A DNA stretch of 64,000 nt, taken from Octopus sinensis. Lineage: Eukaryota. Under the pieces are notes generated by a model. It saw only the letters and a list, made by a program, of their open reading frames with translations, did not search any database and was not told the origin of the DNA. Positions 1,488-56,589 of this stretch are shown here, piece after piece. The position numbers and the translations under genes were made by a program. The stretch lies in the NCBI RefSeq assembly GCF_006345805.1, contig NC_043002.1:115010001-115074000 (forward strand). The letters are read 5' to 3'. Within the stretch, counting starts at the first letter, position 1. Each line of letters starts with the position of its first letter.

Positions 1488-4400
1488 TAGATGCTTAGAT
1501 ATACTAAATATATTTGCAGGGGAAAAGACCTTCATCATAAAATTAGTTGTGTTTAGACATGCAATTATTATCTGTCATCCATTCACTCGTTGCCATGCGC
1601 ATTTAATCACTAACACACATATAAATTAAGTCAAGTACATATGGGTAATTGAAAGCTATTCTGTAAACGCACTAGACCAGTAAATATACACCAGGGCCCA
1701 CCACTTATTGCCACAGAAACGAAACCAGTGTTATTTGTCTTGGATAAAGGTTTCTCATAAAATGCTAAAAGTCCCGAAGAATCGTCGGAGTGGAACATGG
1801 TGAAATAACAGAATGAAAAAGTATCACTGTTTTGCCATTTTTTAACTTGGCGCAACTTCAGACGGCCATAACTTCTTAATTAATCAAGATAATCCAAAAC
1901 AAAGAACAAGTAAAAGTGTTTTAAATGAGTTACCCCCCTATTTCCGTAAGTCCACAATAAAATTGTTTGACACAGGATAAAATATATAACTCCTAATCCC
2001 AAGTGCTTTCGTTGATATTGACATGATCAGGAGATAAGGAAGAAAGAAAGGAAAATACATAGTTAGACTCAAGTATATGCTGTAAAGTAAAAGCTGTAAA
2101 GTAAAAACTGACGGTCCACAATGTCCGTCAGTTCAACTACGTTTTCAGTCAGATTTAGCTGTTATCTACATCCTCAGCGCTGCCATAGTCATTGTTCTGA
2201 CAAACACCTCTGCACCCAGAACAAGCAGGTGAACATGGAAGCCCAACCTGACTTGCAGGCACACCACACAACGACTGTGCTGTAGGATCACAGTCAGAGA
2301 TAACTGAGAGTTTCCATCCCCAATCTTCAGCATTCGGTGTGTTTCCCTGCCACTCCTCGACTTGGTGGTAGACACGCAAGTTATGGTACTTCGTAACCGC
2401 TAATGTTGGTGGCAACATGTTAGGATGAACTGCCTTATTTCACGCGGTGACAAGGTATTGGAATCGGCGACATAACATTATCGAACGAGTCGCCTTCTCA
2501 CCTGCCGTGATTATGTTGTCCTTTGTTGTCCTTTTACTCCTGAACACCTCTGCCTGATCCCGAAATGCCTCGTTGTCTTCAATGAGATTGAAACCTGCAG
2601 CCTTCCCGATCCCAAAAACCCTGGATGTGGTACCACATCCCAAGAAAGCATGTACAAAGAGAATATGCGTGTAAACCTGAACCCCCAAGCTTCTGCTTGA
2701 TAGAATTAACACTCATGCTCCTACTTCTGCTCCTTTCATTGGTTCAGGTCGGAAGCTGATGTCATGTTTGTTTTCTCCTGCAAAGTGGATGAGAAGAACA
2801 AGTAGGTCTGTATCGTCTCCGACTAACACAGTTTCTCTGTCCTCAGAGATTCTCACTGCAGTTAGGACAATAAGAGTATCTGCATCTCCTCAGGCATGGA
2901 GGAGCTTTCTTTGGCCAGGGCATCTCCTAAAAGTTCTCTTGGTTTGAGAGGAATTCTATATTTTTTAACTGGAGCTTCGGAGACAGCTGGAATGTCACCT
3001 TCCTACCCTCACACTCCACTCAGCGCTGATGCGTGCTGTCTCTTGTTGAAGGTGCCGCCTTATAATCAAACACAATCACTGCCTCACCATAGTGTTTTGT
3101 AACATATCTGGTACAGTCCTGAAATATCTTGTATGTTTTACTAAGTTGCCATGGCATGCAATGGAGAAGAGCACCTCCATCAAGGACGTATGTGATATTT
3201 TTCCATGGTGCTGGGTTCTGTGGTACCTCAGACCAGATGGCGTCAGCTAGTTGTGGCTATACAGCTTTTAGGAGCTTTTCTTTCCCTTCGAACAAGGTAG
3301 GTGGGTAGTTGCAGAGTTCATAGGTGAGGGCATTCGGAAGATCATTTGCCTGTGATCCTGCAATAATGATTTGTTGAAACAGAAGATCAATCTGTACTTC
3401 ATCACCTATCTTGACTGCCGACTTAGAGTCAAAAGTCACAGTTTGCGTTTTCTTTCTGAAACTGTACTTGACCACATGTTGTCCAACCATTTCATTAAGA
3501 ATATCATATTGGATCCTTTTTGCATATTCCACATTAACCTCGGAACCAGCCGAGATTCCACTGACTATTTTGAGGAGGGATGAGTCTGCTTCGAATGGAG
3601 ACCTCCAGTCAATGAAAGACAGCATTTTGCTACAGTTACTAATGTCCCTTGTTTGCCGAGCTTGTAATATGTCTTTATGATGTTCAGTTGTGTCGTATGT
3701 GATGGACGTCAACTGTTGCATTGTCATGTTTACTTCTGCACAGACTGGCATTAAAAGACATCAGACCAGTCTTTGAGTTTCCGCCAATCCCTTCCCTCTG
3801 ATGATACCTCCACTCGTCTTCAGACTTCTTATTAGTACATTTTCGATCACCAGGTCTGGAGACAACCCTGCCCAGAAACGGTCACTCCTCTTGACTACAT
3901 GTACTCACTGGTGAACTGTTGGTAGACATTGGGTTGTATGCCTTCCAGTTTTGTCATCTTCTGCAAATAGAGGTGCAATGACTTCGTGTTCAAGTTAAAA
4001 CTAGAGGCAGCTATATACGGAAGCATAGCTTGCGACGTCTCCAAATAGAAGGACCAATCTTTCATTTGTTCTGATCACGTGCATGACCTCATGATGTCTA
4101 TCAATTCCATGCATTACAGCCACAGACGTGTAGTACGCTAGCTCGATTCCAACATGTCCTTGTGTGTCCCAAGTTTCTGTTGTAGATCCTGCAGATACAA
4201 AGATGATTCTACACCACTGAGCGTAATTTCATAGAGGTTGTTCTCTCTTGTCTCCAATTCCAGTGGCACACTGTCCTTAAATAAAGACAACTTGATCCCT
4301 AACAGACTGCTCAAGAGTAGTGTGGGAAGGAAGGAATCCACAAGGAGATGACCTCGAATGACACAAGCAACTGCGTTTCCAGTGAGTGTATGAGTAACAG

Positions 4401-5598
4401 TGTCCTTAGCGAAGATCACTTCCAATATTTCGTGAAGGCCTCTTCCTCTCATCAAGTGCCCAATGCCACCCAGAAAGCTCAGTAGTGTGTAAAATCCCCC
4501 AAGTCTTAAAATAATCAGCTGTCGATCACTGTCCTCTCCAAAAGTGAGCACTGGTGTTGCTCCATAGTGCTCTGCAACGAAGTGTAAGGCTGAGTTGACA
4601 CACATCATGTTACCCTGGTTCATATCAAATATTGGTAGGAACATGGTGGATGATTGTCCTGGGTGGTCTCCATTGTTTACCATTTGCATGTATCCCGACC
4701 ATGTTGGTCTTGGTAACCGGTCTGACACGGACGTTTTCCACTGTCAGATCTTCATACTTGATATTAGCAAGTTTATCACCAAGTTCTATGAATTTCTTAA
4801 TGCTGATGTGTCCTACTGCAGCGATCGCCTCTGCTGTCACAGAAATACGTTTTACCAGTCAGGTGCCATCACATTTAGATGTTACAACTGCTATAATACT
4901 CATTCGAGGGAATGTCCTAGAGCCGTCAAGAGTTCTAGAGTCATGATCCACGTTGTTGTCTGAACTCCGGAATGTCCAATCCCTGGTTGACAGCTGCACT
5001 GCGTTCCTAAGTTTGCAACGGTGAATAAGAACTACAGAATCTGTGGAAATTCAGTGTGTCAATCAGAATTCTTGAGGCAAGATGCGAATGCATTTGAACA
5101 CCTAGACCTAATTGCAATGGTGGAGTCAGAACTTTGGGGCGGGAGTCTGCATTATCGCTTGCCCCAATGAGTTCACCTCCAACCGTTTTTCTTTTCCAAC
5201 AAATACGGTGTTCAGTAATAAGCGTAGTGACTCTGGAAAATAGTTAGTAGCTTCTGAGATATCACTCATATAAAGACTTGTTGTACAACTGACTTAACAA
5301 CACTTCTAATGAGGTTGACTGCAGTTTCTATCAGTATCGACTTCTCCGTTTACCCCTTACCCCTGGTAAAGGTATAGGGCTGCCTCAAATCTCTTGACAG
5401 ACATTTCTATGTGGAAGATGTACCAGAAAAACATGGGTTAGAACACCAAAAATGTCTTGATAGCTTCATAAAAAGTGTTGCTGTGCCTGTCTGTACCTTG
5501 GTCGTCTAATCCTGAAATCTAAAAGTTCACCCCTGAAAAAATATTGTTCCACTCAAAAGATTTTATGGTACTTTTAGTATATCATGAAGGGTACCCTA
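1488..5598 (-). mobile_element. Decayed Academ (AcademX-type) DNA transposon: transposase, XPG/PIN-like nuclease and C-terminal Cys-rich finger, with many stops and frameshifts
   Basis: Colinear minus-strand fragments: SLGQAIMQ..PKVLTPPLQLGLGVQMHSH (~5200-5100), DNNVDHDSRTLDG (~4960), LRLGGFYTLLSFLGGIGHLM (~4500), GDADTLIVLTAV..VLVGDDTDLLVLLIH (~2890-2785), HNLRVYHQVEEW..EDWGW and GLPCSPACSGCRGVCQN (~2390-2190). Ends read TAG...CTA. The domain order matches the Academ description; superfamily assigned from memory, not by a search. Confidence 0.75.
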
Positions 5599-5610
5599 GT
5601 CTTTTACTAT

Positions 5611-6000
5611 TTTACTTGTTTCAATCATTTGACTGCGGCCATGCTGGAGCACCGACTTTAGTCGAGCAAATCGACCCAGGGACTGTAAGCCTAGTACTTA
5701 TTCTATAGGTCTTTTTTGCCGAACCGCTAAGTTATGGGGACGTAAACACACCAGCATCGGTTGTCAAGCGTTGTTGGGGGGACAAACACAGACACACAAA
5801 CACACACACACAAATACATATATATGTACATATATACGACGGGCTTCTTTCAGTTTCCATCTATCAAATCCACCCACAAGGCTTTGGTCGGCCCGAGGCT
5901 ATAATAGAAGACACTTGCCCAAATTGCCACGTGGTGGGACTGAACCCGGAACCATGTGGTTGGTAAGCAAGCTACTTACCACACAGCCACTCCTGCGCCT
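5611..6000 (-). mobile_element. Full-length SINE family A
   Basis: The reverse complement has a tRNA-like head AGGCGCAGGAGTGGCTGTGTGG (A-box) and GGTTCAGTCCC (B-box), an internal (TA)n(TG)n tract and the family tail. Confidence 0.9.
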
Positions 6001-8245
6001 ATTGGATGTCTCACCGAAATCCGAACTCAGATTGCTGGATTCAAATTCCAGAGTGCTACTGAGCAAATACCAACAAGTTTCGTTTCTATTGCAATTAGTG
6101 GTGGATTCTGGGGAATATCAGCTAATTTGACTAAATACGGTATCTATCAATATATATTATATATCATTTCAATTCATCTTACAGAGTCTCAGTATCATAG
6201 GATAGAAATCAACATTTCACAACTAATGGTAGCATATTATCGCAGCAAGTATATTTCCAGTGTATTGCTGTCTGTACTTCAACATTGGCGTATTTTTGAC
6301 TTGAAGTTCCATGAGACATTTAATGAAATAAAGTAAAGTTATACTGAGCGTAAATATACATGTGTGTGTAGGGGGTGTATGTGAGCATTATGTGTGCGTG
6401 CATGTATGTGTGCGTTGTATATGTTTCTATAACTCTCCTCCCAATGAGAAAAACTAGCACGAAATATTTTACATAATTTACCGTTTTACCATATATTTGC
6501 CCGAAAAGCAATGAATATGCTATCAAGAAGTTGAAGCACAACAGGCACTGCATCGAGAGATGGTGATTTTTAAGTAAAAGTCAACCAAATTTTATGTGTT
6601 AAGAAAGTGCCATATTTTCAGTCCTAAAACGCTTTAAGAATTATCATTAAATTGACCTGGAATGAATACCAACAAGGACTAGTAAACTAACTCGTGTCCT
6701 GAAAGCAGTTTGTATGCTGTTGTTTCTATATTCCAAATGCAGCATAAATACAGTATCCATCTTGTTTTATAATTTGTTAGTTGCTGACATCATTCATGCG
6801 CGCGAGATAAATGTTACGCCATGAGGAAGGAAATAGAGCTAATACTTTTGGTTGAACCTTTTGTTATAACGAAACACAATGTATAGTGATGTTACAGGAT
6901 GAATATGACAGTCTTGAAGATAAAAATATAAATAACAGTGAATAATGAAAGTGTGAGTAAGGAAGCTAAGGGGAGAAGTAACATGGTGAAACACATTCTA
7001 TACGTTAAACACGAAGCTAGACATTGGTTCTCACTGTATGTTTCGGTTATACCATTGATGATATTTATTCATTTGTTCTTTTATGTAACACACACGGATT
7101 TGGGGAATATGCCATTTAGAAAAGAAACCGAACAGAAAACATGTCATCTTTCTTTTCCAATCTTCTGAAATAGAGCTAGCATATGATTACTTTTTATTTT
7201 GTCATGAGTCCTTGAATAGAAAACCCTTGCCTAAGGGCAAGTGTATTTTTTCACGTTCAAAATTTTAAAAAAACTAATATTATCCGATGACACATATATT
7301 GAAGATATAACAGGTTACTCAGCATTTATATTTGTCATCCTAATCCTTAATTCTAGGTCTAAGAACGTTGAAATATTGGAGCTATCTATCTGTCAGTTTT
7401 TTCTTAAGCTTGCTATATATATCATGAGAGTTTCGCCTTAAGCAAATTTATATTACCATTTATGGTTTTCTGAATGAATGCTTGATAATATAGCTAGGAA
7501 ATTTATGATCCAACCGACCTAACATTTATCACTCCTTTCTTTTCTCATCCATCCATGCATCCATCTGTATATTCTCCTATTTATTCATCTTGTATCTCTA
7601 GATGTTATATGTGTGCGTGCTTCCGTGCAAGTGTGTATGTGTTTTCACCCGTGAATGTGTACGTGCTTACCTGACACTCCTTATTTCGCTTTACATATTG
7701 ATCTAATATTTTCTGTATTAATGCATATTTTGTGTTTTGCTTTCGTTTTTATTTTTTATTTTTTATGCAATTGCTTCTAAGTTCATGGGTGAGCTATGCC
7801 ATAGAGGCACTCAGGATATTTTACTGTAAAAGAGGGTGGGAAAGTCACTAAGCTCATCCAGTTATCAGTAATTGGTAATTCCTGTCAAATACTGAAATTA
7901 TTCCATATCTTAATTTCTTGTTTTAGTATTAGGTATTTGTTATGTCGTTTCTTAAATCCCTATTAACTATACTTAATCTGTTAGAATCTCCCTTTTAAGG
8001 ACGTCGTAAATGTATGCATTTGTTTTGTATTTAGTATTTATTCAGAGAAGGGCCATTCTTTCTTTTCAGCATATACCCTCCCCCTGTAGAATATTGACCT
8101 CTTACATGGGCATACTGAAATCGATATTTTTGTCACCTCAATATCTTAGGGAAAGCGTCTACATTTTCGTTACTCTTATATGCTAATATCCCTATTACAA
8201 TTAGATAACTGTTCTACAGCTAATGTGTCACACACACACACACAC

Positions 8246-16153: not shown

Positions 16154-16392
16154 AACACTATATATAACATATATAGATAGATAAATAGATAGATAGATAG
16201 ATAGATAGATATAAATATACACACACATACATACACACACGTACGCACACGGATGCATATTCATTGAGAAAGGGTTACAAAGATTTTGTATGTGTATATA
16301 TGTGTACTATTTGCATATATTTGAGTATATATGTGTATATATATATATATATACATACAACATATATATATATATATATAATATATACATAC

Positions 16393-16434
<42 letters not shown>

Positions 16435-16604
16435 TATATTATATATATATATATATAATATATACATACATATATATATATATACATATATATTTATATG
16501 AATGTATATATATATATGTATATATATATGTGCATGTATGTATTATCCGCACACACACACACACATATATATAATATATATATAACTATATATACATACA
16601 TACA

Positions 16605-16637
<33 letters not shown>

Positions 16638-20141: not shown

Positions 20142-20604
20142 CTCCCCGTCTCTCTTTCATTCGTGCACTCTTTCGTCTCCCTCTCTACATAATAAGAGGG
20201 GGATACAGCGCATGCGTTTGTGCATGTGTACTCATAGTAACCGTTGTATGGCCGAACGGTTAAAAACTTCGCTTCGCAGACACAAGGTCTCGCGTTCGAT
20301 TCAACTGAATGGAAACGTACACTAATGACATTTTCTATGACATAATAAGTAAAATTGAGTACGCAGGAATTGTAAAATAGCCAGTCGGGTGGATTATACC
20401 TGTAATTCAAAAATGCAGCCTTGTCACACACTGGATCACCTGCTTCATCTTAAAGAATTATGTTCAGAGTATATGTGTCTGTGGTTGTTAATTAATTCTA
20501 CACATATTTAAATAATCAGACAGCTGAATTCTCATAGCCAAACGTCGGAGCTCCACCAATAAGCCAATATATACGCATTATATATACTTAATATATATGT
20601 TTGC

Positions 20605-20660
<56 letters not shown>

Positions 20661-20674
20661 TATATATATATAAT

Positions 20675-20723
<49 letters not shown>

Positions 20724-20737
20724 GTGTGTGGTGTGTG

Positions 20738-21150
20738 CAAGCGTGGCAGTGTGGTAAGAAGCTTGCTTCCCTTCCACATGGTTCTGGGTTCACTCCCACT
20801 GCGTGGCACCTTGGGTAAATGTCTTTTGGGTCGAGCAAAGCGTCATGAGAGGATTTAGTAAACATAAACCGAAAGAAGCTCGTCGTATATATATATAGAT
20901 ATATATATATATATGTATGTATGTATGTATATTTATTTATTTGTGTGTCTTTATACCAGTTTGTTCCCCCACTATCGCTTGACAACTGATGATGTGTTTG
21001 CGTCTCCCTAACTTAGCGGTTTGGCAAAATTAGAATAAGTACTAAATAAGTCTTACAAAGAATGTCTCGGGGTCGATTTCTTCAACTTAAACCTTTTAAG
21101 GTAGTGCTTCGGCATGGCCGCAGTCAAATGCCAGAAACTGGAAAAAAAAG
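20738..21150 (+). mobile_element. SINE family A (diverged)
   Basis: Head GTGGCAGTGTGGTAAG...GGTTCACTCCC and tail GCATGGCCGCAGTCAAATG. Confidence 0.85.
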
Positions 21151-22580
21151 ATAGATGTACGACTGTTACTGTTATGTCAAGAGGTTCACTTACATAATCT
21201 TAATCCATTTTGCAATGGGTTACAGATAACTTAGTCGTGATCCTAAATGCACATTGAAAACCTGTCGCAGGACACCAAGCAAGAATTATTGGGAACCGCG
21301 CGTAGGAACTATAATATATTCTTATCCCTATTTCTCATTGATAAATATATATATATATATTATATATATATATATATATATTTAAAAAAGGAGATGTGGA
21401 ACACGAGTTGTGATATATAAAAAAAGGAAATGAAGAAAATGCTGACAAAATAATTTAAGTAAGGGAGAGTGTATTTAATTAGGTGAAAGTTCTTTTTTTA
21501 AAACAAAAACAGAGAAAAATTGGGTTAGAATACAATGTTCATTTTTTGTGAATAATTTCAGTGTATAAGAAAAAAAGTAAGAGTCTTTTACAGTGTTCTG
21601 TTTCAGAATAAGATATTTAGTAAAAGCGTGTAATATACAGTTTTTTGTGGAAAAGTTTTTTGTCAGATTTCATTATTCTACACAGAAATATTATAGAGTG
21701 GTTGATTGGGATGCCCGTTAGAGCGTTGGACAAATTTACCTTACACTGTTTCTTTCGGCTCTTTGTATTCTGCTTTCAAACCTCACCGGCGTTAATTTTA
21801 CTCTTTATGTTTTTACAATTTAGCCGGTCTTTAATTTTTAGTCTCCAGTAAGTTGTTTTAGATTGATTAAGTCCTGCGACCGAATAAGCGGCCCCTTAAA
21901 TTTTCGGTATTCTTCCTAAGTTCGAAAATATAATTTATATTTTCAAAATTGGCACAGATAAAATATCTTGCAGTATTTAGTTACAACCCTTTCGTATCAG
22001 ACCTTGGTCAATTGTGCTTTCCATTCTTCTGTGGTCGATACTTTAAAACAAACAAAAAACAGGAATATCTGTTATTTTAAATATATTAACGGCAATGATA
22101 TTTGTGTAAATTTTTTGTTTCGATTCTGGTGAATATTTTCATTTACACAGCTTTCACGCACGCAATTTTCTTCATATATATGTTTAAACTATAAAAAAAG
22201 TTGTAGCCAATTATATTCCCACTTATGTGTATTTAATATCAAAGGAAATTGCTTATTGATTGTATTTTACTGAGGAGACATTTCTAGAGAAATCGTGTAA
22301 TGCAGCATTTTTTATATTCTAGTATGCAGTTTTCCAGTGATGAAGCGGCTGAAAATAATCGGATGTGCAAATGAGCTAAATGCATGACAAAGTAGAACAT
22401 AGCTAGAATTATGTTAATCATACTGCATAATAGCTAAGTTAAGGTAATAGTAATAGTAACATTAGCTGAAAATTCAATAATAAAAACTGAAATATATTTA
22501 AACACATAAGCTGCATCAATAGAGCAATAACATCAAAGTAAAATATTTTTATTATGGAGAATTTTTAACCCAAATCAAAA

Positions 22581-22970
22581 GGAGTGGCTGTGTGGTAAGT
22601 AGCTTGCTAACCAACCACATGGTTCCGGGTTCAGCCCCATCTTAGGCAGGTGTCTTCTGCTATAGCCCCGGGCCGACCAATGCCTTGTGAGTGGATTTGG
22701 TAGACGGAAACTGAAAGAAGCCTGTCGTATATATGTATATATATATATATATTTGTGTGTGTGTTTGTGTGTCTGTGTTTGTCCCCCTAGCATTACTTGA
22801 CAACCGATGCTGGTGTGTTTACGTCCCCGTCACTTAGCAGTTCGGCAAAAGAGACCGATAGAATAAGTACTGGGCTTACAAAGAATAAGTTCCGGGGTCG
22901 ATTTGGTCGACTAAAGGCGGTGCTCCAGCATGGCCGCAGTCAAATGACTGAAACAAGTAAAAAAGAAAAA
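22581..22970 (+). mobile_element. SINE family A
   Basis: High identity to the copies at 5611-6000 and 55706-56145. Confidence 0.9.
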
Positions 22971-23565
22971 GAGAGTATATAACAATAAGTGATCATCGGA
23001 ATATAGTTGTGAAATGTAAGTTTCTGGTGAATAGATGAACTTCAGCATTCGAAGTATTACGACAATCTACTTCTCTTTTATTCTCCTTTATTAGTTTAGA
23101 ATAACATTGACCAATTACATTCTACTAACTAAGAAATGATTGTACTTCCCAAACAACTTCCTGGAAAATCAAATTTAAAGACTGACTATATTATGAAAAT
23201 ATAGTGTCAAACATTACTACAGGACTGAATCACAAACATAGAATTGAATATTCTCTTTCTTACAAAATACTTTAAATTTCTTCACTTCTGCTAAAGTTCA
23301 CTCTGCGACCACGTCTATCTAGTTTCGATCTTATTCCATGGCAGCTTGGGCAAGTATATGGTACAACCTCGGATTGTCTATTAAATTCTATTCTTGAGAA
23401 TAGAAATTAATTGGCGTTGAGTATCGTAGTACACACACATACACACACAAACGCAGGCACACACGCACACACACACGTGTGTATATAGATATATATCAAT
23501 ATTTATTTGTTAAGTATTAATAATTATAATATATATATATATATTATATATATATATATATTATA

Positions 23566-25313: not shown

Positions 25314-25315
<2 letters not shown>
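24925..25315 (-). mobile_element. Dimeric SINE family B
   Basis: Head+CORE+tail1 followed by a headless B-box+CORE+tail2, as at 37566-37967. Confidence 0.85.
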
Positions 25316-25395
<80 letters not shown>

Positions 25396-25415
25396 TAATA
25401 ATAATGATAATATTA

Positions 25416-25492
<77 letters not shown>

Positions 25493-26129
25493 TAATAGTA
25501 ACCTGTTAAATTTTCTTTCTTGACCTTGATTTAGTTTGAGGTCAGTTGTAGAAGGTGGTTGAAAGGTCTACATTACCTATAATCACGATAGTCGTAAGGT
25601 TTAAAAATTATTTCTATAAACTGCTCTTTCCAACATTAATTAGTCACCATGAACAATGATAGAAGCTTCTCTCTATTTTTGGTTATTGTTACAAGACTAC
25701 TTCCTGCTGAAGGAAACTCATTATACTTTGTTCTACGATTCAGGAAATTGAAACCTCCTTATAGCGCGCTATAAACATTCTGTTATCGATGTTCTTGTCA
25801 AACTTTTAGCAAAACAAAGAGACTTTCTGGGCAAAATTACTTAACGAGATCACAAGCAGAGACTCCATTCATAGCACTATCCATAAAAAAACTTTAAAAT
25901 ATACTTCTAAATTAATATTATTATGTCAATATACAACGCGGCGAGTGGGGATAATTGTCAACATGTGGGACAAAATGCCTAGAAACATTTGTTCAGGCTC
26001 TTAACATTGTAAGTTCAGATTCCGTTCAGGTCAACATTTTTCTTTCGTTCTTTCGGGGTCAACAAAATAATGTATTCATCTAATATAATGAATGTTTTTG
26101 TTTTCAATCTTCGCTTTTTATTTGCTCCT

Positions 26130-33205: not shown

Positions 33206-33249
33206 AAAAGGGAAGTGCTGTGATGATTGTCACAAATTACTTTGTCTTA

Positions 33250-33592
33250 TATCTTTTACTTGTTTCAGTCATTAAACTGCGGCCATGCTGGGGCACTGCC
33301 TTGAAGAATTTTCTATCGAATGTATCGATTTATTTTTAAGTACTTGTACTTATTCTATCGGTCCTTTAGTCGAACCGCTAAGTTACGGGAACGTAAAAAC
33401 AGCAACGCCGACTGTCAAACGGTAGGCGGAGAAAGCACAAGCACAAAAACACACACCCACACATAGTTATATACATATAAACGACAGGCTTCTTTCAGTT
33501 GTTTGTCTCCTAAATCCACGCGCAAGACTTTGGTTGGCCCGAGGCCATAGAAGAACCTGCTCAAGGTGCCATGCAGTGGGACTGAACCTGGG
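33250..33592 (-). mobile_element. SINE family A, head truncated at the B-box
   Basis: Family tail and body present; abuts a SINE B head at ~33592. Confidence 0.8.
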
Positions 33593-33995
33593 TTGGCAGA
33601 AACGTTAGCACGCCGGGCGAAATGCTCAGCGGTATTTTGTCTGCCGTTACGTTCTGAGTTCAAATTCCGCCGACGTCGACTTTGCCTTTCATCCTTTCGG
33701 AGTCGATTAAATAAGTACCAGCTACGCACTGGGGTCGATATAATCGACTTAATCCGTTTGTCTGTCCTTGTTTGTCCTCTCTGTGTTTAGCTCCTTATGT
33801 GTAGTAAAAAAATAGGTATTTCGTCTGTCGTTACGTTCTGAGTTCAAATTCCGCCGAGGTCGACTTTGCCTTTCATCCTTTCGAGGTCGATTAAATAAGT
33901 ACCAGCTACGCACTGGGGTCGATATAATCGACTTAATCCGTTTGTCTGTCCTTGTTTGTCCCCTCTGTGTTTAGCCCCTTGTGGGTAGTAAAGAA
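33593..33995 (+). mobile_element. Dimeric SINE family B
   Basis: Two tandem B-box+CORE+tail1 modules joined at AAATAGGTATTTCGTCTGTCG. Confidence 0.85.
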
Positions 33996-34765
33996 ACAGA
34001 ACCTGGGCTGCGAAGCAAGTTTCTAACAACAAAAGCAGAAGCAAATGCCATATTTATACCGTTTTTAATGCAGCATAAATTTCACAAGTTTATATGCAAG
34101 ATGTAATGTTTCTGCATTTGTGCCTGCATTGTCCATTGACCTTGCTGCTAATTTGTTCATGCAGTGATGCACATCACGGGATATAATGTATCAGTCTGAA
34201 CATGTTGCACTCTTTACACCTTCGAATCTATTTTTGTTTGCCTTCAATTTTCTGATTTTAGCCACAGCGGAGGTGGGCAAAGCGCCAAAGTTAATATTCC
34301 TTTAACCTTATTGTCGGTGATGAGTATCCCAGCAGAGAGTTTTGCGGAGTGAAGCTATTAATGTTTCAATTATTTTGTCTGTCTTTTATTTTTGTATGAG
34401 CTGAGTGAATAAAAATTATCTTAGGATGCTGTTTTTGTTGTTGTTGTTATTTTTGCTGTTGCTGCTACTGCTGCTCCTGTCGGTACGCTCTCACATTTTG
34501 TCTCGTATGTAGTGGCAGGAACTAGGAAGTTAGAAGATTGCTGCAGTATGAAAAAAAAAAGGGATAACAGAGCTCCTTGCAAAGACATGACTTGCCATTT
34601 GTGGACTTTTGTTTGACTGTGTTATGTGTGAGTGTGGCTTCCATACAACCTTTGATAATGTGCAATGCATTTTTACGTATAAGTTGTGGCTTCATGTAAT
34701 GCGCTGTGGAGTGACTGTGAGTCCATATGGGTCAGGCATATTCCATGATGAATATAAAGCAGTGT

Positions 34766-38975: not shown

Positions 38976-38999
38976 TATTTATATATCTCCGTATACACC

Positions 39000-42909
<3,910 letters not shown>

Positions 42910-43132
42910 AATATATATGTTCTTTTCTTTTATTTGCTTCAGACATTTGACTACATCCATGCTGAAGCACCGCCTTAGTTGAACAAATCGACCCCAGGAT
43001 CTAATCTTTGTAAGCCTAGTATTTATTCTATCGGTCTCTTTTGTCGAGCGGCTAAGTTACGGGACGTAGACACGCCAACATCGCTTGTGAAGCAGTGGTG
43101 GGCGAGAAACACAGACATACAAACATATACAC

Positions 43133-43174
<42 letters not shown>

Positions 43175-43320
43175 ATTTATATATAGAGGGCATTATACAT
43201 ACATGCCAGGAGGCATTATACATACATGCCAAACGCTAAGAGGGACAATCAGTCATTTCTACCAAAAATATTACTAATCCCACCGAATGCAATTTTTCAA
43301 AGTAAGACATTTAAAAATAT

Positions 43321-43370
43321 AGACCTGTATCACAGTGATTTCATACTTACGTATAATCATCAGCAGGCCT
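43321..43370 (-). ncRNA. Type I hammerhead ribozyme (copy 1), predicted cleavage between 43328 and 43327
   Basis: Minus strand AGGCCTG-CTGATGA-TT-ATAC GTAA GTAT-GAA-ATCAC T GTGAT-A-CAGGTCT: 7-bp stem I (one G-U), intact CUGAUGA and GAAA, 4-bp stem II, palindromic stem III, AUA cleavage triplet. Confidence 0.8.
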
Positions 43371-43800
43371 GAATGTATTATAAATAAACAACGACCCTGC
43401 CTCGCTTAAGCCGATCAGCTAACTGATCAACATCAACGAAGCACATGGGTGAGTTTATAATATTACATCCGGGTAAATGGCAAACTTTTACGAATTGCAT
43501 TTCGGGAGAGGAAAAGTTTTTTCGGAATAAAAATTTAGCAATTAAGGACAACTACTTAATAAGGAAAACTTAACAAGAAATTGTCAGGTAGATAGCGTAA
43601 AAACCTCATAAGAGAAAAAATTTCGAAAATAATTATTTCTTATTGAACATATTAATTTATATATAGAGGGCATTATACATACATGCCATGAGGCATTATA
43701 CATACATGCCAAACGCTAAGAGGGACAATCAGTCATTTCTACCAAAAATATTACTAATCCCACCGAATGCAATTTTTCAAAGTAAGACATTTAAAAATAT

Positions 43801-43848
43801 AGACCTGTATCACAGTGATTTCATACTTACGTAATCATCAGCAGGCCT
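43801..43848 (-). ncRNA. Type I hammerhead ribozyme (copy 2), predicted cleavage between 43808 and 43807
   Basis: As copy 1, but the stem II region reads T-TAC GTAA GTA-T (U.U at the base). Confidence 0.75.
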
Positions 43849-44277
43849 GAATGTATTATAAATAAACAACGACCCTGCCTCGCTTAAGCCGATCAGCTAA
43901 CTGATCAACATCAACGAAGCACATGGGTGAGTTTATATATATTACATCCGGGTAAATGGCAAACTTTTACGAATTGCATTTCGGGAGAGGAAAAGTTTTT
44001 TCGGAATAAAAATTAGCAATTAAGGACAACTACTTAATAAGGAAAACTTAACAAGAAATTGTCAGGTAGATAGCGTAAAAACCTCATAAGAGAAAAAATT
44101 TCGAAAATAATTATTTCTTATTGAACATATTAATTTATATATAGAGGGCATTATACATACATGCCAGGAGGCATTATACATACATGCCAAACGCTAAGAG
44201 GGACAATCAGTCATTTCTACCAAAAATATACTAATCCCACCGAATGCAATTTTTCAAAGTAAGACATTTAAAAATAT

Positions 44278-44325
44278 AGACCTGTATCACAGTGATTTCA
44301 TACTTACGTAATCATCAGCAGGCCT
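44278..44325 (-). ncRNA. Type I hammerhead ribozyme (copy 3), predicted cleavage between 44285 and 44284
   Basis: Identical to copy 2. Confidence 0.75.
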
Positions 44326-45034
44326 GAATGTATTATAAATAAACAACGACCCTGCCTCGCTTAAGCCGATCAGCTAACTGATCAACATCAACGAAGCACA
44401 TGGGTGAGTTTATATATATTACATCCGGGTAAATGGCAAACTTTTACGAATTGCATTTCGGGAGAGGAAAAGTTTTTTCGGAATAAAAATTTAGCAATTA
44501 AGGACAACTACTTAATAAGGAAAACTTAACAAGAAATTGTCAGGTAGATAGCGTAAAAACCTCATAAGAGAAAAAATTTCGAAAATAATTATTTCTTATT
44601 GAACATATTAATTTATATATAGAGGGCATTATACATACATGCCAGGAGGCATTATACATACATGCCAAACGCTAAGAGGGACAATCAGTCATTTCTACCA
44701 AAAATATTACTAATCCCACCGAATGCAATTTTTCAAAGTAAGACATTTAAAAATATAGATATATATATATATAAGTTACGTCCCCGTAACTTAGCGGTTC
44801 GGCAAAAGAGACCGGTAGAATAAATACTAGGCTTACAAAGATTAGGTCGATACATACGACGGGCTTCTATCAGTTTCCATCTACCAAAATCACTCACAAG
44901 GACTTTGTCGGGCCAAGGCTATAGAAGAAGGTACTTGTCCAAGAGGCCATGCAGTGGGGATGAACCTGAAACCATGTCGTTGGGAAGCAAGATTCTTACC
45001 ACACTCCAACGCCTACGCCATGTATGTATGTATG

Positions 45035-47368: not shown

Positions 47369-47994
47369 CATCATCATCATTGTTCGACCGTGATCGAGAC
47401 AATGGAATTCACTATGTTACGCCAGACTTCACGGTCCATCATAGCATTACGGAGGTCCTGTTGCTGGATGTCTGTATCCCTGGAGATTGCATCAGGGTAG
47501 GAGAGTGTGCGCCCTCTGGTATCGCGAGCAGATGGTTTCCAGGGGAGAAGAGTAGAAATTACCTTTTTTTCAGCTCTACAACAATGTCCAGCAATCTGGA
47601 CTCTTCTACCATTCACAAGAGATGATACAGGTGGTAATTTCCCATATATTTGTACTTTGGTTGGATGACGCTTCCACGAGAGATTTTGAGCTCTCATAAG
47701 GAGGCGAGTGTAAGTTCCATCCAACCGCCTCTCAAGCTTCTTTGATAACGTCCAGGTTTCTGAGCCATATAGTAGAACTGGTTCGACTGTGGCTTTAAGT
47801 TTGAAATCTCTACTTAGATTTGATGACCAGATCTTATACATATCATTACAGGCTGACCAGGCCATATCTTTTCTAGTTAGAAAATCTTTTTCAGATGATG
47901 ATATTTATTACCCAAGATATTTGTAATTAGAAACCATATTTAAGGGCGTATTGTTGAGAGTATGGATGATGAAATAATTGATGATGATTTCATC
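47369..47994 (-). mobile_element. 5'-truncated RTE-clade LINE with (TGA)n tail and 9-bp TSD
   Basis: NYKYLG..AWSACNDMYKIWSS..EPVLLYGSETWTL..RRVQIAGHC..AMMDREVWR C-terminal RT region; ATCAATGCT at 47360-47368 and 47995-48003. Confidence 0.9.
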
Positions 47995-50317: not shown

Positions 50318-50720
50318 GACAACGACGACGACGAAGAAGAAGAAGAACAAGAAGAAGAACAAGAACAAGAACAAGAACGAGAAGAAAAAGGAGAAGAAGA
50401 AAAAGAAGAAAAAGAAGAAGGAGGAGGAGAAGAAGAAGAAGAAGAAAAAGAAGAAGAAGAAGAAAAAGAAGAAGGAGGAGGAGAAGAAGAAGAAGAAGAA
50501 GAAGAAAAAGAAGAAGAAGAAGAAGAAGAAGAAGAAGAAAAAGAAGAAGAAGAAGAGAAGAAGAAGAAGAAGAAGAAAAAGAAAAAAAAAGAAGAAGAAG
50601 AAGAAGAAGAAGAAGAAGAAGGAGGAGGAGGAGGAGAAGAAGAAGAAGAAGAAGGAGGAGGAGGAGAAGAAGAAGAAGAAGAAGAAGAAGAAGAAGAAGA
50701 AAAAGAAGAAGAAGAAGAAA
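50318..50720. repeat. ~400-bp (GAA)n/(GGA)n polypurine tract
   Basis: Direct inspection. Confidence 0.95.
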
Positions 50721-51438: not shown

Positions 51439-51553
<115 letters not shown>

Positions 51554-51558
51554 CTAGT

Positions 51559-51662
<104 letters not shown>

Positions 51663-55420: not shown

Positions 55421-55705
55421 TGAGTTACCTATTTTTGCATTTTGGTGTACTAACTCTGAAACCAAATATATACTATACAAAAACAGTCTGAAGTCAAGCT
55501 CGCTTGAGTACCTGATTTATAATATTTCATCTAGTATAAAAGGTACAGTCAGGAATTTGAGGACTTACCAGTAACACCGTGAAGAATAAAAAATTATAAC
55601 ATATATTTTCAACAACATATTCTCAATAACAGTGACGCATATGTTAAGTTTTGTGTGTAGGGGGAGTTAAATTACAAAAGTTACTGATAATCTCTCAACA
55701 GATAG

Positions 55706-55865
55706 GCGAAGGAGTGGCTGTGTGGTAAGTAGCTTGTTTACCAACCACATGGTTCCGGGTTCAGTCCCACTGCGTGGCATCTTGGGCAAGTGTCTTCTTC
55801 TATAGCCTCGGGCCGACCAAAGCCTTGTGAGTGGATTTGGAAACTGAAAGAAGCCCATCGTACAT

Positions 55866-55908
<43 letters not shown>

Positions 55909-56145
55909 GTGTGTGTGTGTGTGTGTGTGTGTATGTTTGTGTGTCTGTGTTTGTCCCCCTAGCATTGCTTGACAACCGATGCTGGTGTATTTACGTCGCC
56001 GTCACTTAGCGGTTCGGCAAAAAAGACCGATAGAATAAGTGCTGGGCTTACAAAGAATAAGTTCCGGGGTCGATTTGCTCGACTAAAGGCGGTGCTCCAG
56101 CATGGCCGCAGTCAAATGACTGAAACAAGTAAAAGAGTAAAAGAG
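55706..56145 (+). mobile_element. Full-length SINE family A
   Basis: Complete head, internal microsatellite and tail. Confidence 0.92.
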
Positions 56146-56589
56146 ATACTTCGAGTTAAATGGGGAGTTGAACATATTGTGTAGATAACTCTTTAATGGT
56201 GAGGTGTATGTAGAAATAGGATCGATATTACATTCGCTTAAAACTCATTAGCAGAACTATACATATGCTTACAAATAACCGAGTGTAGCATCAATGAAAT
56301 TAGTTATTTTGTTTTATTTTACCCGTTTCAATCATTGGAATGAAGTTACATTGGTGTACTACCTTAAATTTTTTACTTTTCCGTATCGACAGCGATAATT
56401 AATTCAATCACGTAATTACTTTATTGAGTGGGAAGTTCACATTGTGACACGCACTGATTTTTATTAGCCATCAGTTTGGGCTAAATATATAAGAACAACA
56501 GGGACAAATAAACATACAAACATATGTATGTGTTAAATAGAGAAAGAGAGAAAGAGAGAGAGAGGAGGGGAGAAAAGATGAGAGATTGG

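What the first reader, a model, noticed from the sequence alone, without database searches (positions are those of the whole stretch)
43172..44759. Hammerhead-ribozyme tandem array: a candidate cephalopod retrozyme / circRNA system
Seen: ~3.3 near-identical ~478-bp units. On the minus strand each complete unit folds into a full type I hammerhead (stem I AGGCCTG/CAGGTCT, CUGAUGA, stem II with a GUAA loop, GAAA, stem III, AUA cleavage triplet). There is no ORF. Known: tandem repeats with one type I hammerhead per unit (newt satellite 2, schistosome Sm-alpha, metazoan non-LTR retrozymes, Penelope pseudo-LTRs) are transcribed, self-cleave to monomers and can circularise. Inference: this is a non-autonomous self-cleaving RNA family in an octopus-like genome, with a rather large monomer, probably mobilised by a Penelope-type RT. 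I cannot confirm that it is undescribed.
Basis: partly seen in the sequence, partly recalled or inferred. Interest (0 to 1): 0.93.

Follow-up and report, generated by a model that had tools for sequence, protein, structure and literature searches.

The report
Hammerhead-ribozyme tandem repeat in an octopus genome
A 478-bp non-coding repeat, present 3.3 times head to tail inside an octopus SINE, carries one hammerhead self-cleaving RNA motif per unit and looks like a cephalopod member of the known animal "retrozyme" elements; self-cleavage, circular RNA and other genomic copies could not be tested.

Summary
The array spans 43168-44759: 3.3 units of about 478 bp at 99% identity, 33% GC, with no ORF longer than 61 codons. 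On the minus strand each unit junction carries a complete type I hammerhead layout: helix I 7 bp, CUGAUGA, helix II closed by GUAA, GAAA, helix III, AUA then the cut site.

The motif has weak points.
- The 10.1/11.1 position is a U·U mismatch.
- Helix III is marginal as a hairpin. It is near-palindromic, so two motifs fold into a double hammerhead, as in newt and axolotl repeats.
- No Rfam hammerhead model matches it, even at E<=10.
- A model I built from four validated retrozyme ribozymes ranks it first, but only at 13.5 bits.

A strict descriptor is very unlikely to match by chance. The closest validated relative, axolotl HHR_Amex2, has the same unusual features and does cleave.

The array interrupts an octopus SINE at its internal (TA)n microsatellite. 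Its sense 5' end lies 4 nt from the predicted cut site. The monomer RNA is strongly structured (z -8.2).

Best reading: a non-LTR retrozyme or non-autonomous Penelope-type element, a new member of a known kind. No second copy was found, so covariation, expression and cleavage remain untested. Interest is modest.

The parts
43168..44759 (-). Tandem array of 3.3 units (about 478 bp each). In the sense direction: unit A 44759->44285 (lacks the first 4 nt, CAGG), unit B 44284->43808 (477 nt), unit C 43807->43328 (480 nt), partial unit D 43327->43168 (160 nt).
   Evidence: TRF; unit alignment; self-BLAST.
44278..44325 (-). Hammerhead motif at the A/B junction: helix I AGGCCUG/CAGGUCU, CUGAUGA, helix II U.U + UAC/GUA with GUAA loop, GAA, helix III AUCA-CUG-UGAU, A17. 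Predicted cut between 44285 and 44284.
   Evidence: Sequence; pattern and descriptor scans; ranked first by the validated-HHR CM at 13.5 bits; no Rfam hit.
43801..43848 (-). Hammerhead motif at the B/C junction, identical to the previous one. Predicted cut between 43808 and 43807.
   Evidence: Rfam negative.
43321..43370 (-). Hammerhead motif at the C/D junction with a UA insertion in helix II. It still fits as U.U + 3 bp with a 6-nt loop, but the alternative non-hammerhead fold is favoured. Predicted cut between 43328 and 43327.
   Evidence: Rfam negative.
42926..43170 (-). 3' (tail) half of the host SINE plus its internal (TG)n(TA)n microsatellite. It abuts the sense 3' end of the array (ATAAATTA|(TA)n).
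   Evidence: Alignment with uninterrupted paralogous SINE copies elsewhere in the window.
44850..45020 (-). 5' (tRNA-like head) half of the same host SINE, on the other side of the insertion.
   Evidence: in paralogues at 5590-6020, 22570-23000 and 55680-56160 the two halves are contiguous across an (AC)n(AT)n tract.
44760..44775 (.). (AT)7-8 spacer between the sense 5' end of the array and the inverted SINE fragment. Together with the (AT)n at 43154-43185 it places (TA)n on both sides of the insertion.
   Evidence: Sequence; TRF.
44776..44856 (+). Inverted copy of about 75 nt of the host SINE tail (source 42998-43068), lying between the array and the SINE head. It is a junction rearrangement of uncertain timing.
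   Evidence: 92% complementary arms (I23). It shares private variants with the local tail but is about 7% diverged and has an 8-nt deletion.

Best explanation
The array is a non-coding, non-autonomous retroelement of the metazoan 'non-LTR retrozyme' type: tandem units with one type I hammerhead each, thought to derive from and be mobilised by Penelope-like elements. It sits in an octopus genome.

Proposed mechanism, with the status of each step:
1. The minus strand is transcribed as a multimer (inferred; no promoter identified).
2. Hammerheads of adjacent units pair through their near-palindromic helix III (AUCACUGUGAU) into a double hammerhead and cut after A17. This releases 477-480-nt monomers with 5'-OH and 2',3'-cyclic phosphate ends. 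The fold is computed; the cleavage is inferred from the axolotl, newt and PLE precedents.
3. Monomers adopt a very stable, highly paired fold (computed) and can be ligated into circles (inferred by analogy).
4. An RNA of at least 3.3 units, whose 5' end had been made by self-cleavage, was reverse-transcribed at a nick in the (TA)n tract inside a SINE. This gave an insertion that starts 4 nt after the cut site and ends at an internal AU-rich stretch. The junction positions are shown. The RT, probably a Penelope-like element's RT/GIY-YIG enzyme, is inferred.
5. Alternatively, a shorter insertion was later expanded in place by unequal exchange.
For: - All invariant core nucleotides and three helices are in the canonical type I order at each unit junction.
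- The descriptor false-positive rate is about 3e-10 to 2.5e-8 per nt. That gives at most about 2e-5 for one 478-nt unit on both strands. The positive controls are recovered.
- Axolotl HHR_Amex2 has the same unusual traits: U.U plus 3 bp in helix II, a palindromic helix III and A17 (sequence). It self-cleaves 22% per hour as a monomer and much better as a dimer (PMC7229834).
- Two octopus motifs cofold into the double hammerhead at -29.9 kcal/mol, against 2 x -11.1 for separate monomers. The intermolecular helix III is worth -10 to -12 kcal/mol, against -0.2 for the hairpin. This is the architecture described for metazoan type I hammerheads in tandem repeats (PMC4209133).
- The monomer RNA folds at -136.9 kcal/mol, z = -8.2. 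The antisense strand gives z = -5.4. As a circle the values are -130.2 kcal/mol and z = -6.3. This fits the 'highly self-paired' retrozyme RNAs of PMC7229834.
- GC is 33% and there is no ORF. The unit length and the copy number of 3.3 lie within reported ranges.
- The array interrupts a SINE that is uninterrupted in at least five paralogues in the window, at its (TA)n tract. A bias toward (TA)n microsatellites and multicopy head-to-tail insertions are reported for Penelope-like elements and their non-autonomous derivatives (PMC8557442).
- The sense 5' end of the array is 4 nt from the predicted cut. The chance of lying within +/-4 nt is about 9/478 = 0.02.
- Octopus genomes carry recently active Penelope families, and the giant squid genome has 235 Rfam Hammerhead_1 loci.
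Against: - No Rfam hammerhead covariance model matches, even at E<=10 on 63-101 nt.
- My CM built from four validated retrozyme hammerheads ranks the three motifs first, but only at 13.5 bits (E about 0.13). That barely exceeds a clearly non-hammerhead hit at 12.8 bits.
- G10.1-C11.1, described as highly conserved (PMC4209133), is replaced by U.U, and helix II has only 3 A/U-rich pairs.
- The isolated motif prefers a non-hammerhead pairing: -11.1 vs -9.1 kcal/mol, and -14.4 vs -6.7 in copy C.
- Only one locus is known. nhmmer and BLAST find no other copy in the 64 kb. Two metagenome scans, one viral scan and two six-frame protein searches found nothing. There is therefore no covariation and no proof of a family.
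- No Penelope RT was found in the window.
- An unrelated 1.47-kb tandem duplication lies 270 bp away. Young tandem repeats therefore arise here without any ribozyme.
- The inverted SINE fragment at the junction is about 7% diverged from its source, whereas the units differ by under 1%. At least part of the copy number may come from later local amplification.
- There are no expression data.
Confidence: 0.6

Rival explanations
1. An ordinary local tandem duplication (minisatellite) of some inserted or pre-existing sequence that happens to contain a hammerhead-like string. No ribozyme activity and no RNA-based life cycle.
For: - No Rfam hammerhead model matches, and my independent CM gives only 13.5 bits.
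- The motif has a U.U mismatch at 10.1/11.1, weak helices II and III, and a more stable competing fold.
- No other copy was found by any route.
- A neighbouring 1.47-kb tandem duplication of similar youth has no hammerhead core.
Against: - A full core plus three correctly placed helices is expected at most about 2e-5 times per unit by chance.
- The same odd features occur in the validated axolotl HHR_Amex2.
- Helix III is near-palindromic, as dimeric hammerheads require.
- The sense strand is much more structured than shuffles and than the antisense strand.
- The array boundary lies 4 nt from the predicted cut site (p about 0.02).
- The sequence is foreign to the SINE it interrupts.
Confidence: 0.2
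2. Not an independent retrozyme family. Instead, a fragment of a larger element, such as a run of Penelope-like pseudo-LTR terminal sequence left by a heavily truncated or recombined PLE insertion, or the internal repeat of another composite transposon.
For: - PLE pseudo-LTRs carry hammerheads and PLE insertions form partial tandems. Retrozymes and pLTRs are phylogenetically intermingled in Xenopus.
- PLE-type (TA)n targeting and odd 5'-junction inversions are described.
- An inverted fragment sits at the sense 5' junction here.
Against: - The array is bounded on both sides by the two halves of one SINE.
- There is no RT or GIY-YIG ORF in or near it, and no Pfam hit on the ten long, non-repetitive ORFs of the window that were scanned.
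- Three full identical 478-bp units cannot be a truncation of a 3-4 kb element.
- The motif is of the 'canonical' metazoan type (helix I 7 bp, helix II 4 positions, helix III present). It is not the PLE minimal type with a long helix II, a bulge after A9 and no helix III.
Confidence: 0.15

Closest known systems
Axolotl non-LTR retrozyme Rtz_353 with HHR_Amex2 (Cervera & de la Pena 2020, PMC7229834)
   Same: - Tandem non-coding repeats with one type I hammerhead per unit.
- Helix II is a U.U mismatch plus 3 bp.
- Palindromic helix III (ACACGUGU there, AUCACUGUGAU here).
- A at position 17 and a helix I of 6-7 bp.
- Predicted, and in the axolotl shown, to work better as a dimer.

   Different: - No sequence homology outside the core.
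- Unit of 478 bp vs 350 bp; GC 33% here.
- Loop 2 is the GUAA tetraloop here vs CACUA there.
- The axolotl has about 60,000 copies with demonstrated cleavage and circRNAs. Here there is one locus and nothing has been demonstrated.
Mussel (Mytilus galloprovincialis) and coral (Acropora millepora) retrozymes (PMC7229834)
   Same: Invertebrate, including mollusc, tandem repeats with type I hammerheads. They are AT-rich, have no ORF and give highly self-paired monomer RNAs.
   Different: Those ribozymes have a G10.1-C11.1 pair and a GC-rich helix II, and cleave efficiently as single motifs. Their units are 220-360 bp.
Newt satellite 2 and Schistosoma Sm-alpha hammerhead repeats
   Same: One type I hammerhead per tandem unit. 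A short helix III leads to the double-hammerhead mechanism in the newt.
   Different: Different sequences and unit sizes (about 330 bp). Both have a canonical 10.1-11.1 pair and conserved loop-loop contacts, and both are detected by standard models.
Minimal hammerheads in Penelope-like element pseudo-LTRs (PMC4209133)
   Same: - Association with retroelements and dimeric mode of action.
- Palindromic helix III positions.
- The (TA)n and head-to-tail insertion style of PLEs and their non-autonomous derivatives (PMC8557442).
   Different: PLE minimal hammerheads have a long helix II (6-8 bp), a bulged nucleotide after A9, a short helix I and usually no helix III. They flank an RT/GIY-YIG ORF. 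None of these features applies here.

Membership tests
Hammerhead ribozyme, type I | Conserved catalytic core C3-U4-G5-A6-N7-G8-A9 ... G12-A13-A14 ... A15.1-U16.1, with H17 at the cut site | tested here: met
   CUGAUGA ... GAA ... A-U ... A17 is present in all three copies.
Hammerhead ribozyme, type I | Three helices around the core, with helix I open and helices II and III closed by loops | tested here: met
   Helix I is 7 bp, helix II is 3 bp plus a mismatch with a GUAA loop, and helix III is 4 bp with a 3-nt loop. The motif passes a descriptor that also recovers four validated controls. The chance rate is 1 hit per 3.4 Gb (order-0) to 1 per 40 Mb (Markov-1).
Hammerhead ribozyme, type I | G10.1-C11.1 (R-Y) pair at the base of helix II | tested here: not met
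   The position is U.U in all copies. The validated HHR_Amex2 is a precedent with the same mismatch.
Hammerhead ribozyme, type I | Match to the Rfam hammerhead covariance models (Hammerhead_1 and its clan) | tested here: not met
   No hit at gathering score or at E<=10 on 2.1 kb, 101 nt or 63 nt.
Hammerhead ribozyme, type I | Significant score against a covariance model built from experimentally validated metazoan retrozyme hammerheads | tested here: inconclusive
   Model R1 was built from coral, mussel and two axolotl sequences. The three motifs are the top hits in 128 kb, but only at 13.3-13.5 bits (E about 0.13-0.16). The next hit, which is not a hammerhead, scores 12.8 bits.
Hammerhead ribozyme, type I | Compensatory changes in helices I-III across independent copies | not testable with these tools
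   Only three near-identical copies are available. No other locus was found, and no cephalopod genome collection is on hand.
Hammerhead ribozyme, type I | Site-specific self-cleavage | not testable with these tools
   This needs in vitro transcription of monomer and dimer constructs. Only the thermodynamics of the double hammerhead were computed.
Metazoan non-LTR retrozyme | Head-to-tail tandem units, each with one type I hammerhead; no LTR, PBS or PPT; no ORF; low GC | tested here: met
   3.3 units of 478 bp, one motif per junction, longest frame 61 codons, GC 33%.
Metazoan non-LTR retrozyme | Unit length and repeat number within the described range | tested here: met
   The unit is 478 bp, against 150-450 bp (PMC7229834) and 51-972 bp with mostly <=7 units.
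Metazoan non-LTR retrozyme | Monomer RNA highly self-paired | tested here: met
   Sense monomer -136.9 kcal/mol, z -8.2; antisense z -5.4. As a circle, 65% of bases are paired and z is -6.3.
Metazoan non-LTR retrozyme | Mobile: present as an insertion, and as a multicopy dispersed family | tested here: inconclusive
   The insertion into a SINE at (TA)n is shown by comparison with paralogous uninterrupted SINEs. Multicopy status could not be tested: there are no other copies in the window and nothing in the collections that could be searched.
Metazoan non-LTR retrozyme | Expressed as linear and circular monomer RNAs | not testable with these tools
   No transcriptome data are accessible.
Metazoan non-LTR retrozyme | Co-occurrence with, or homology to, Penelope-like elements (pLTR) | tested here: inconclusive
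   No RT domain was found among ten long, non-repetitive ORFs of the window. The literature reports 30 recently active Penelope families in O. vulgaris. pLTR homology cannot be tested without octopus PLE sequences.
Penelope-like element pseudo-LTR minimal hammerhead | Flanks an RT/GIY-YIG ORF; long helix II with a bulge after A9; helix III absent or minimal | tested here: not met
   There is no ORF. Helix II has 4 positions without a bulge, and helix III is present (compared with the description).

The most novel reading that the evidence does not exclude
This is the founding example of a cephalopod retrozyme family. Its insertion junction records the transposition template. The array starts 4 nt after the hammerhead cut site and ends at an internal AU-rich stretch in a (TA)n target. 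This would mean the template was a linear multimer whose 5' end was made by self-cleavage and copied by run-off reverse transcription, rather than a circular RNA copied by rolling-circle reverse transcription as currently proposed. If many loci show the same 5' end, the mechanism of retrozyme mobilisation could be tested directly from genome data.
Probability: 0.2. Interest if true: 0.6.

Novelty: new member of a known kind. Interest (0 to 1): 0.33.

Why it matters
If confirmed, this adds cephalopods to the animal groups that carry hammerhead-bearing tandem retroelements. I found no paper in the held library that describes an octopus or cephalopod retrozyme. The giant squid genome paper lists 235 unexamined Rfam Hammerhead_1 hits.

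It would also be a second natural hammerhead with a U.U pair at 10.1/11.1, one that standard Rfam models miss. Model-based annotation may therefore undercount such ribozymes.

The clean junctions inside a SINE allow a small test of how these elements are copied. None of this changes the general picture of retrozymes.

Tried and rejected
- **Rfam.** I scanned the whole window at gathering score and three narrower stretches at E<=10. No hammerhead family appeared. The weak snoRNA and miRNA hits are artefacts of the UGAUGA string and of microsatellites, and I rejected them.
- **Own covariance model.** I built it from four validated retrozyme hammerheads. The octopus motifs rank first but are not significant. 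Four sequences make the model too stem-specific.
- **Search for other copies.**
  - BLAST and nhmmer of the unit against the rest of the window found none.
  - Exact-pattern scans of JGI metagenome contigs, with two patterns, and of IMG/VR found 0.
  - A unit translation, then all six frames joined, searched against 5.8 billion proteins found nothing.
  - Exact look-ups of two window ORFs were not on record.
- **Penelope RT nearby.** Pfam on ten long, non-repetitive ORFs (the low-complexity GAA-repeat frames were left out) gave no hits. A relaxed search for minimal PLE-type hammerheads in the window found none.
- **Neighbouring array.** I checked whether the 1.47-kb tandem array (38995-42901) is a second ribozyme repeat. 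It has no CUGANGA core. Its CM hits fall in a palindromic, MITE-like segment with CUGACAA, so I rejected them.
- **Other checks.** The bacterial promoter/terminator scan is not informative for a eukaryote. ARAGORN found no tRNA.
Full report
**1. Observation**

Tandem Repeats Finder gives one array at 43168-44759, with period 478, 3.3 copies and 99% matches. Read on the minus strand and cut at the predicted ribozyme site, the units are:
- A, 44759->44285, lacking the first four bases;
- B, 44284->43808, 477 nt;
- C, 43807->43328, 480 nt;
- D, 43327->43168, 160 nt.

The units differ by one substitution and five 1-2-nt indels, mostly in A/T runs. GC is 33%. The longest stop-to-stop frame is 61 codons.

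Each junction reads AGGCCUG-CUGAUGA-UUAC-GUAA-GUAU-GAA-AUCA-CUG-UGAU-A^CAGGUCU.

**2. Is it a hammerhead?**

In favour: every invariant core position is present (C3 to A9, G12 to A14, A15.1-U16.1, H17 = A). Helix I (7 bp, one G-U) is the open helix, which defines type I.

I wrote a descriptor requiring the core, helix I >=6 bp, helix II >=3 bp with a mismatch allowed at 10.1/11.1, and helix III >=3 bp.
- It hits only these three sites in the window.
- It hit once in 40 Mb of Markov-1 random sequence.
- It hit once in 3.4 Gb of composition-matched random sequence. The stricter version that the motif also passes hit zero times.
- With helix III relaxed, the same code recovers the four experimentally validated retrozyme hammerheads printed in Supplementary Table 2 of PMC7229834.

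The chance that a given 478-nt unit carries such a motif on either strand is at most about 2e-5.

Against: No Rfam hammerhead model matches at gathering score on the window. None matches at E<=10 on 2.1 kb, 101 nt or 63 nt.

I then built a covariance model from the four validated sequences and scored every position of the window. The three motifs are the top hits, but only at 13.3-13.5 bits (E about 0.13-0.16). That is barely above a hit of 12.8 bits whose core reads CUGACAA and which is not a hammerhead. This test is inconclusive.

The motif also departs from the canon.
- Position 10.1/11.1 is U.U instead of the highly conserved G-C (PMC4209133).
- Helix II has three A/U-rich pairs.
- The isolated 59-nt motif prefers an alternative pairing, at -11.1 against -9.1 kcal/mol.

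**3. The precedent that resolves most of this**

Axolotl HHR_Amex2 reads CUGAUGA-U-GCC-CACUA-GGC-U-GAA-ACACGUGU-A^UGGGGU. It has the same U.U plus three pairs in helix II, the same palindromic helix III and the same A17.

It self-cleaves 22% in one hour as a monomer and much more efficiently in dimeric constructs.

The octopus helix III, AUCACUGUGAU, is self-complementary apart from a central U.U.
- As a hairpin it is worth -0.2 kcal/mol.
- As an intermolecular duplex it is worth -10 to -12 kcal/mol.
- Two motifs cofold into the double-hammerhead topology at -29.9 kcal/mol, against 2 x -11.1 for separate monomers.

This is the mechanism established for newt satellite 2, and described as the rule for metazoan type I hammerheads in tandem repeats. 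I therefore read the motif as a genuine, weak, dimer-dependent hammerhead of the 'canonical metazoan' kind. It is not the minimal Penelope pseudo-LTR kind, which has a long helix II, a bulge after A9 and no helix III.

**4. The RNA as a whole**

The sense monomer folds at -136.9 kcal/mol, with z = -8.2 against dinucleotide shuffles. The antisense strand gives -105.6 kcal/mol and z = -5.4.

As a circle the sense monomer folds at -130.2 kcal/mol, with 65% of bases paired. In that fold helix I is kept and continues, after a 7-nt internal loop, into a long helix. Helix III is not formed. This is what one expects of a stable, non-cleaving monomer or circle.

**5. Context**

The window is octopod. 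The only homologues of ORF 4141-4743(-) among 5.8 billion proteins come from Octopus sinensis and O. vulgaris.

The array lies inside a roughly 400-bp SINE-like repeat.
- Five paralogous copies elsewhere in the window run uninterrupted through an internal (AC)n(AT)n tract.
- Here the tail half (42926-43170) and the head half (44850-45020) are separated by the array.
- From my own knowledge of octopus repeats, not from a tool result (ARAGORN found no tRNA), I judge this SINE to be tRNA-derived with its sense strand on the minus strand, the same as the ribozyme sense strand.

The array is therefore an insertion into a (TA)n microsatellite. [quoted passage not shown] Octopus genomes contain recently active Penelope families.

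On the sense strand the array begins at base 5 of the monomer, 4 nt after the predicted cut. It ends after base 160, at ...AUAAAUUA, next to (TA)n. A boundary within +/-4 nt of the cut site has a chance of about 0.02. It is what run-off reverse transcription of a self-cleaved linear multimer would give. This is one locus only.

**6. Complications**

- Between the sense 5' end of the array and the SINE head lie (AT)7 and an inverted copy of about 75 nt of the SINE tail (44776-44856). It shares private variants with the local tail (CTAATC, TATTT), so it probably came from there. It is nevertheless about 7% diverged and lacks 8 nt, while the units differ by under 1%. Either the rearrangement predates the array, or the array is old and was homogenised or expanded in place.
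- An unrelated tandem duplication (38995-42901, unit about 1467 bp, about 2.6 copies, 97-99% identity) lies 270 bp away. It has no hammerhead core. Local amplification is clearly active in this region, so the copy number of 3.3 need not reflect the inserted RNA.
- I found no other copy of the unit by any available route: the rest of the window, metagenome and viral pattern scans, or six-frame protein searches. Covariation and family size are therefore untested.
- No Penelope RT was found in the window.

**7. Comparison and novelty**

The locus meets the structural definition of a metazoan non-LTR retrozyme: tandem, non-coding, AT-rich units, one type I hammerhead each, and a highly paired monomer. 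Its size is ordinary. Reported consensus lengths run from 51 to 972 bp, and most families have at most seven units.

I found no description of a cephalopod retrozyme in the held library. The giant squid genome paper merely lists 235 Rfam Hammerhead_1 hits. Retrozymes are already known in molluscs, in the mussel.

This is therefore a probable new member of a known kind. It has two points of minor interest:
- It is missed by Rfam models because of the U.U pair and the AU-rich helices.
- Its junction geometry bears on the nature of the transposition template.

**8. Verdict**

The retrozyme-type reading has confidence 0.6, a chance motif in an ordinary tandem duplication 0.2, and a fragment of a larger PLE-type element 0.15.
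- Interest is 0.33.
- The decisive work is a search of octopus assemblies for further copies and a monomer/dimer cleavage assay.

Noticed in passing
window 38995-42901: A second, unrelated young tandem duplication: unit about 1467 bp, about 2.6 copies, 97-99% identical. It ends about 270 bp from the hammerhead array and is bounded by microsatellites. It has no hammerhead core. It shows that recent local tandem amplification occurs here.
   Followed up: partly
window 44776-44856 (source 42998-43068): An inverted copy of about 75 nt of the host SINE tail sits between the array and the SINE head. It shares private variants with the local tail but is about 7% diverged and has an 8-nt deletion. Its geometry fits snap-back synthesis at the 5' junction, but its age does not match the near-identity of the units.
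   Followed up: partly
window 5590-6020, 20590-21170, 22570-23000, 33230-33600, 55680-56160, and 42926-43170 + 44850-45020: Many copies (72-91% identical) of a SINE-like repeat of about 400 bp with an internal (AC)n(AT)n microsatellite. The copy at 42926-45020 hosts the array. I take it to be a tRNA-derived octopus SINE from my own knowledge, not from a tool result.
   Followed up: partly
window 41540-41730 (repeated at about 39190-39380 and 40080-40270): A palindromic, MITE-like segment inside the 1.47-kb repeat. It gives weak hits (12.8 bits) to my hammerhead model, with the core CUGACAA. I judged these to be chance.
   Followed up: yes
window 33631-33996: A 184-bp unit repeated twice (94% identity), found by Tandem Repeats Finder. 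It appears to be made of tRNA-like SINE-head sequence.
   Followed up: no
window 4141-4743 (-): A 201-codon open frame with no Pfam domain. Its only database homologues are an Octopus sinensis uncharacterised protein (56% identity) and an O. vulgaris hypothetical protein (64%). It is probably a transposon-derived gene fragment. I used it to place the window in an octopod genome.
   Followed up: partly
window 47380-47904 (-): A 175-codon frame containing ...EPVLLYGSETWTL..., which resembles the C-terminal part of non-LTR retrotransposon reverse transcriptases (from memory). It has no Pfam hit at E<=0.01, so this is unverified.
   Followed up: no
array unit, sense positions about 96-137 (e.g. 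window 44189-44148): Each unit contains a direct duplication of a 19-nt element whose ends are self-complementary: GGCAUGUAUGUAUAAUGCC, then UCCU, then the same 19 nt again. It forms a long hairpin in the predicted fold.
   Followed up: no
window 50333-50719, 25315-25501, 16326-16637, 51445-51662: Long microsatellites: (GAA)130, (TAA)62, (TA)160 and (ATAG)54. They are typical of this AT-rich (34% GC) region.
   Followed up: no
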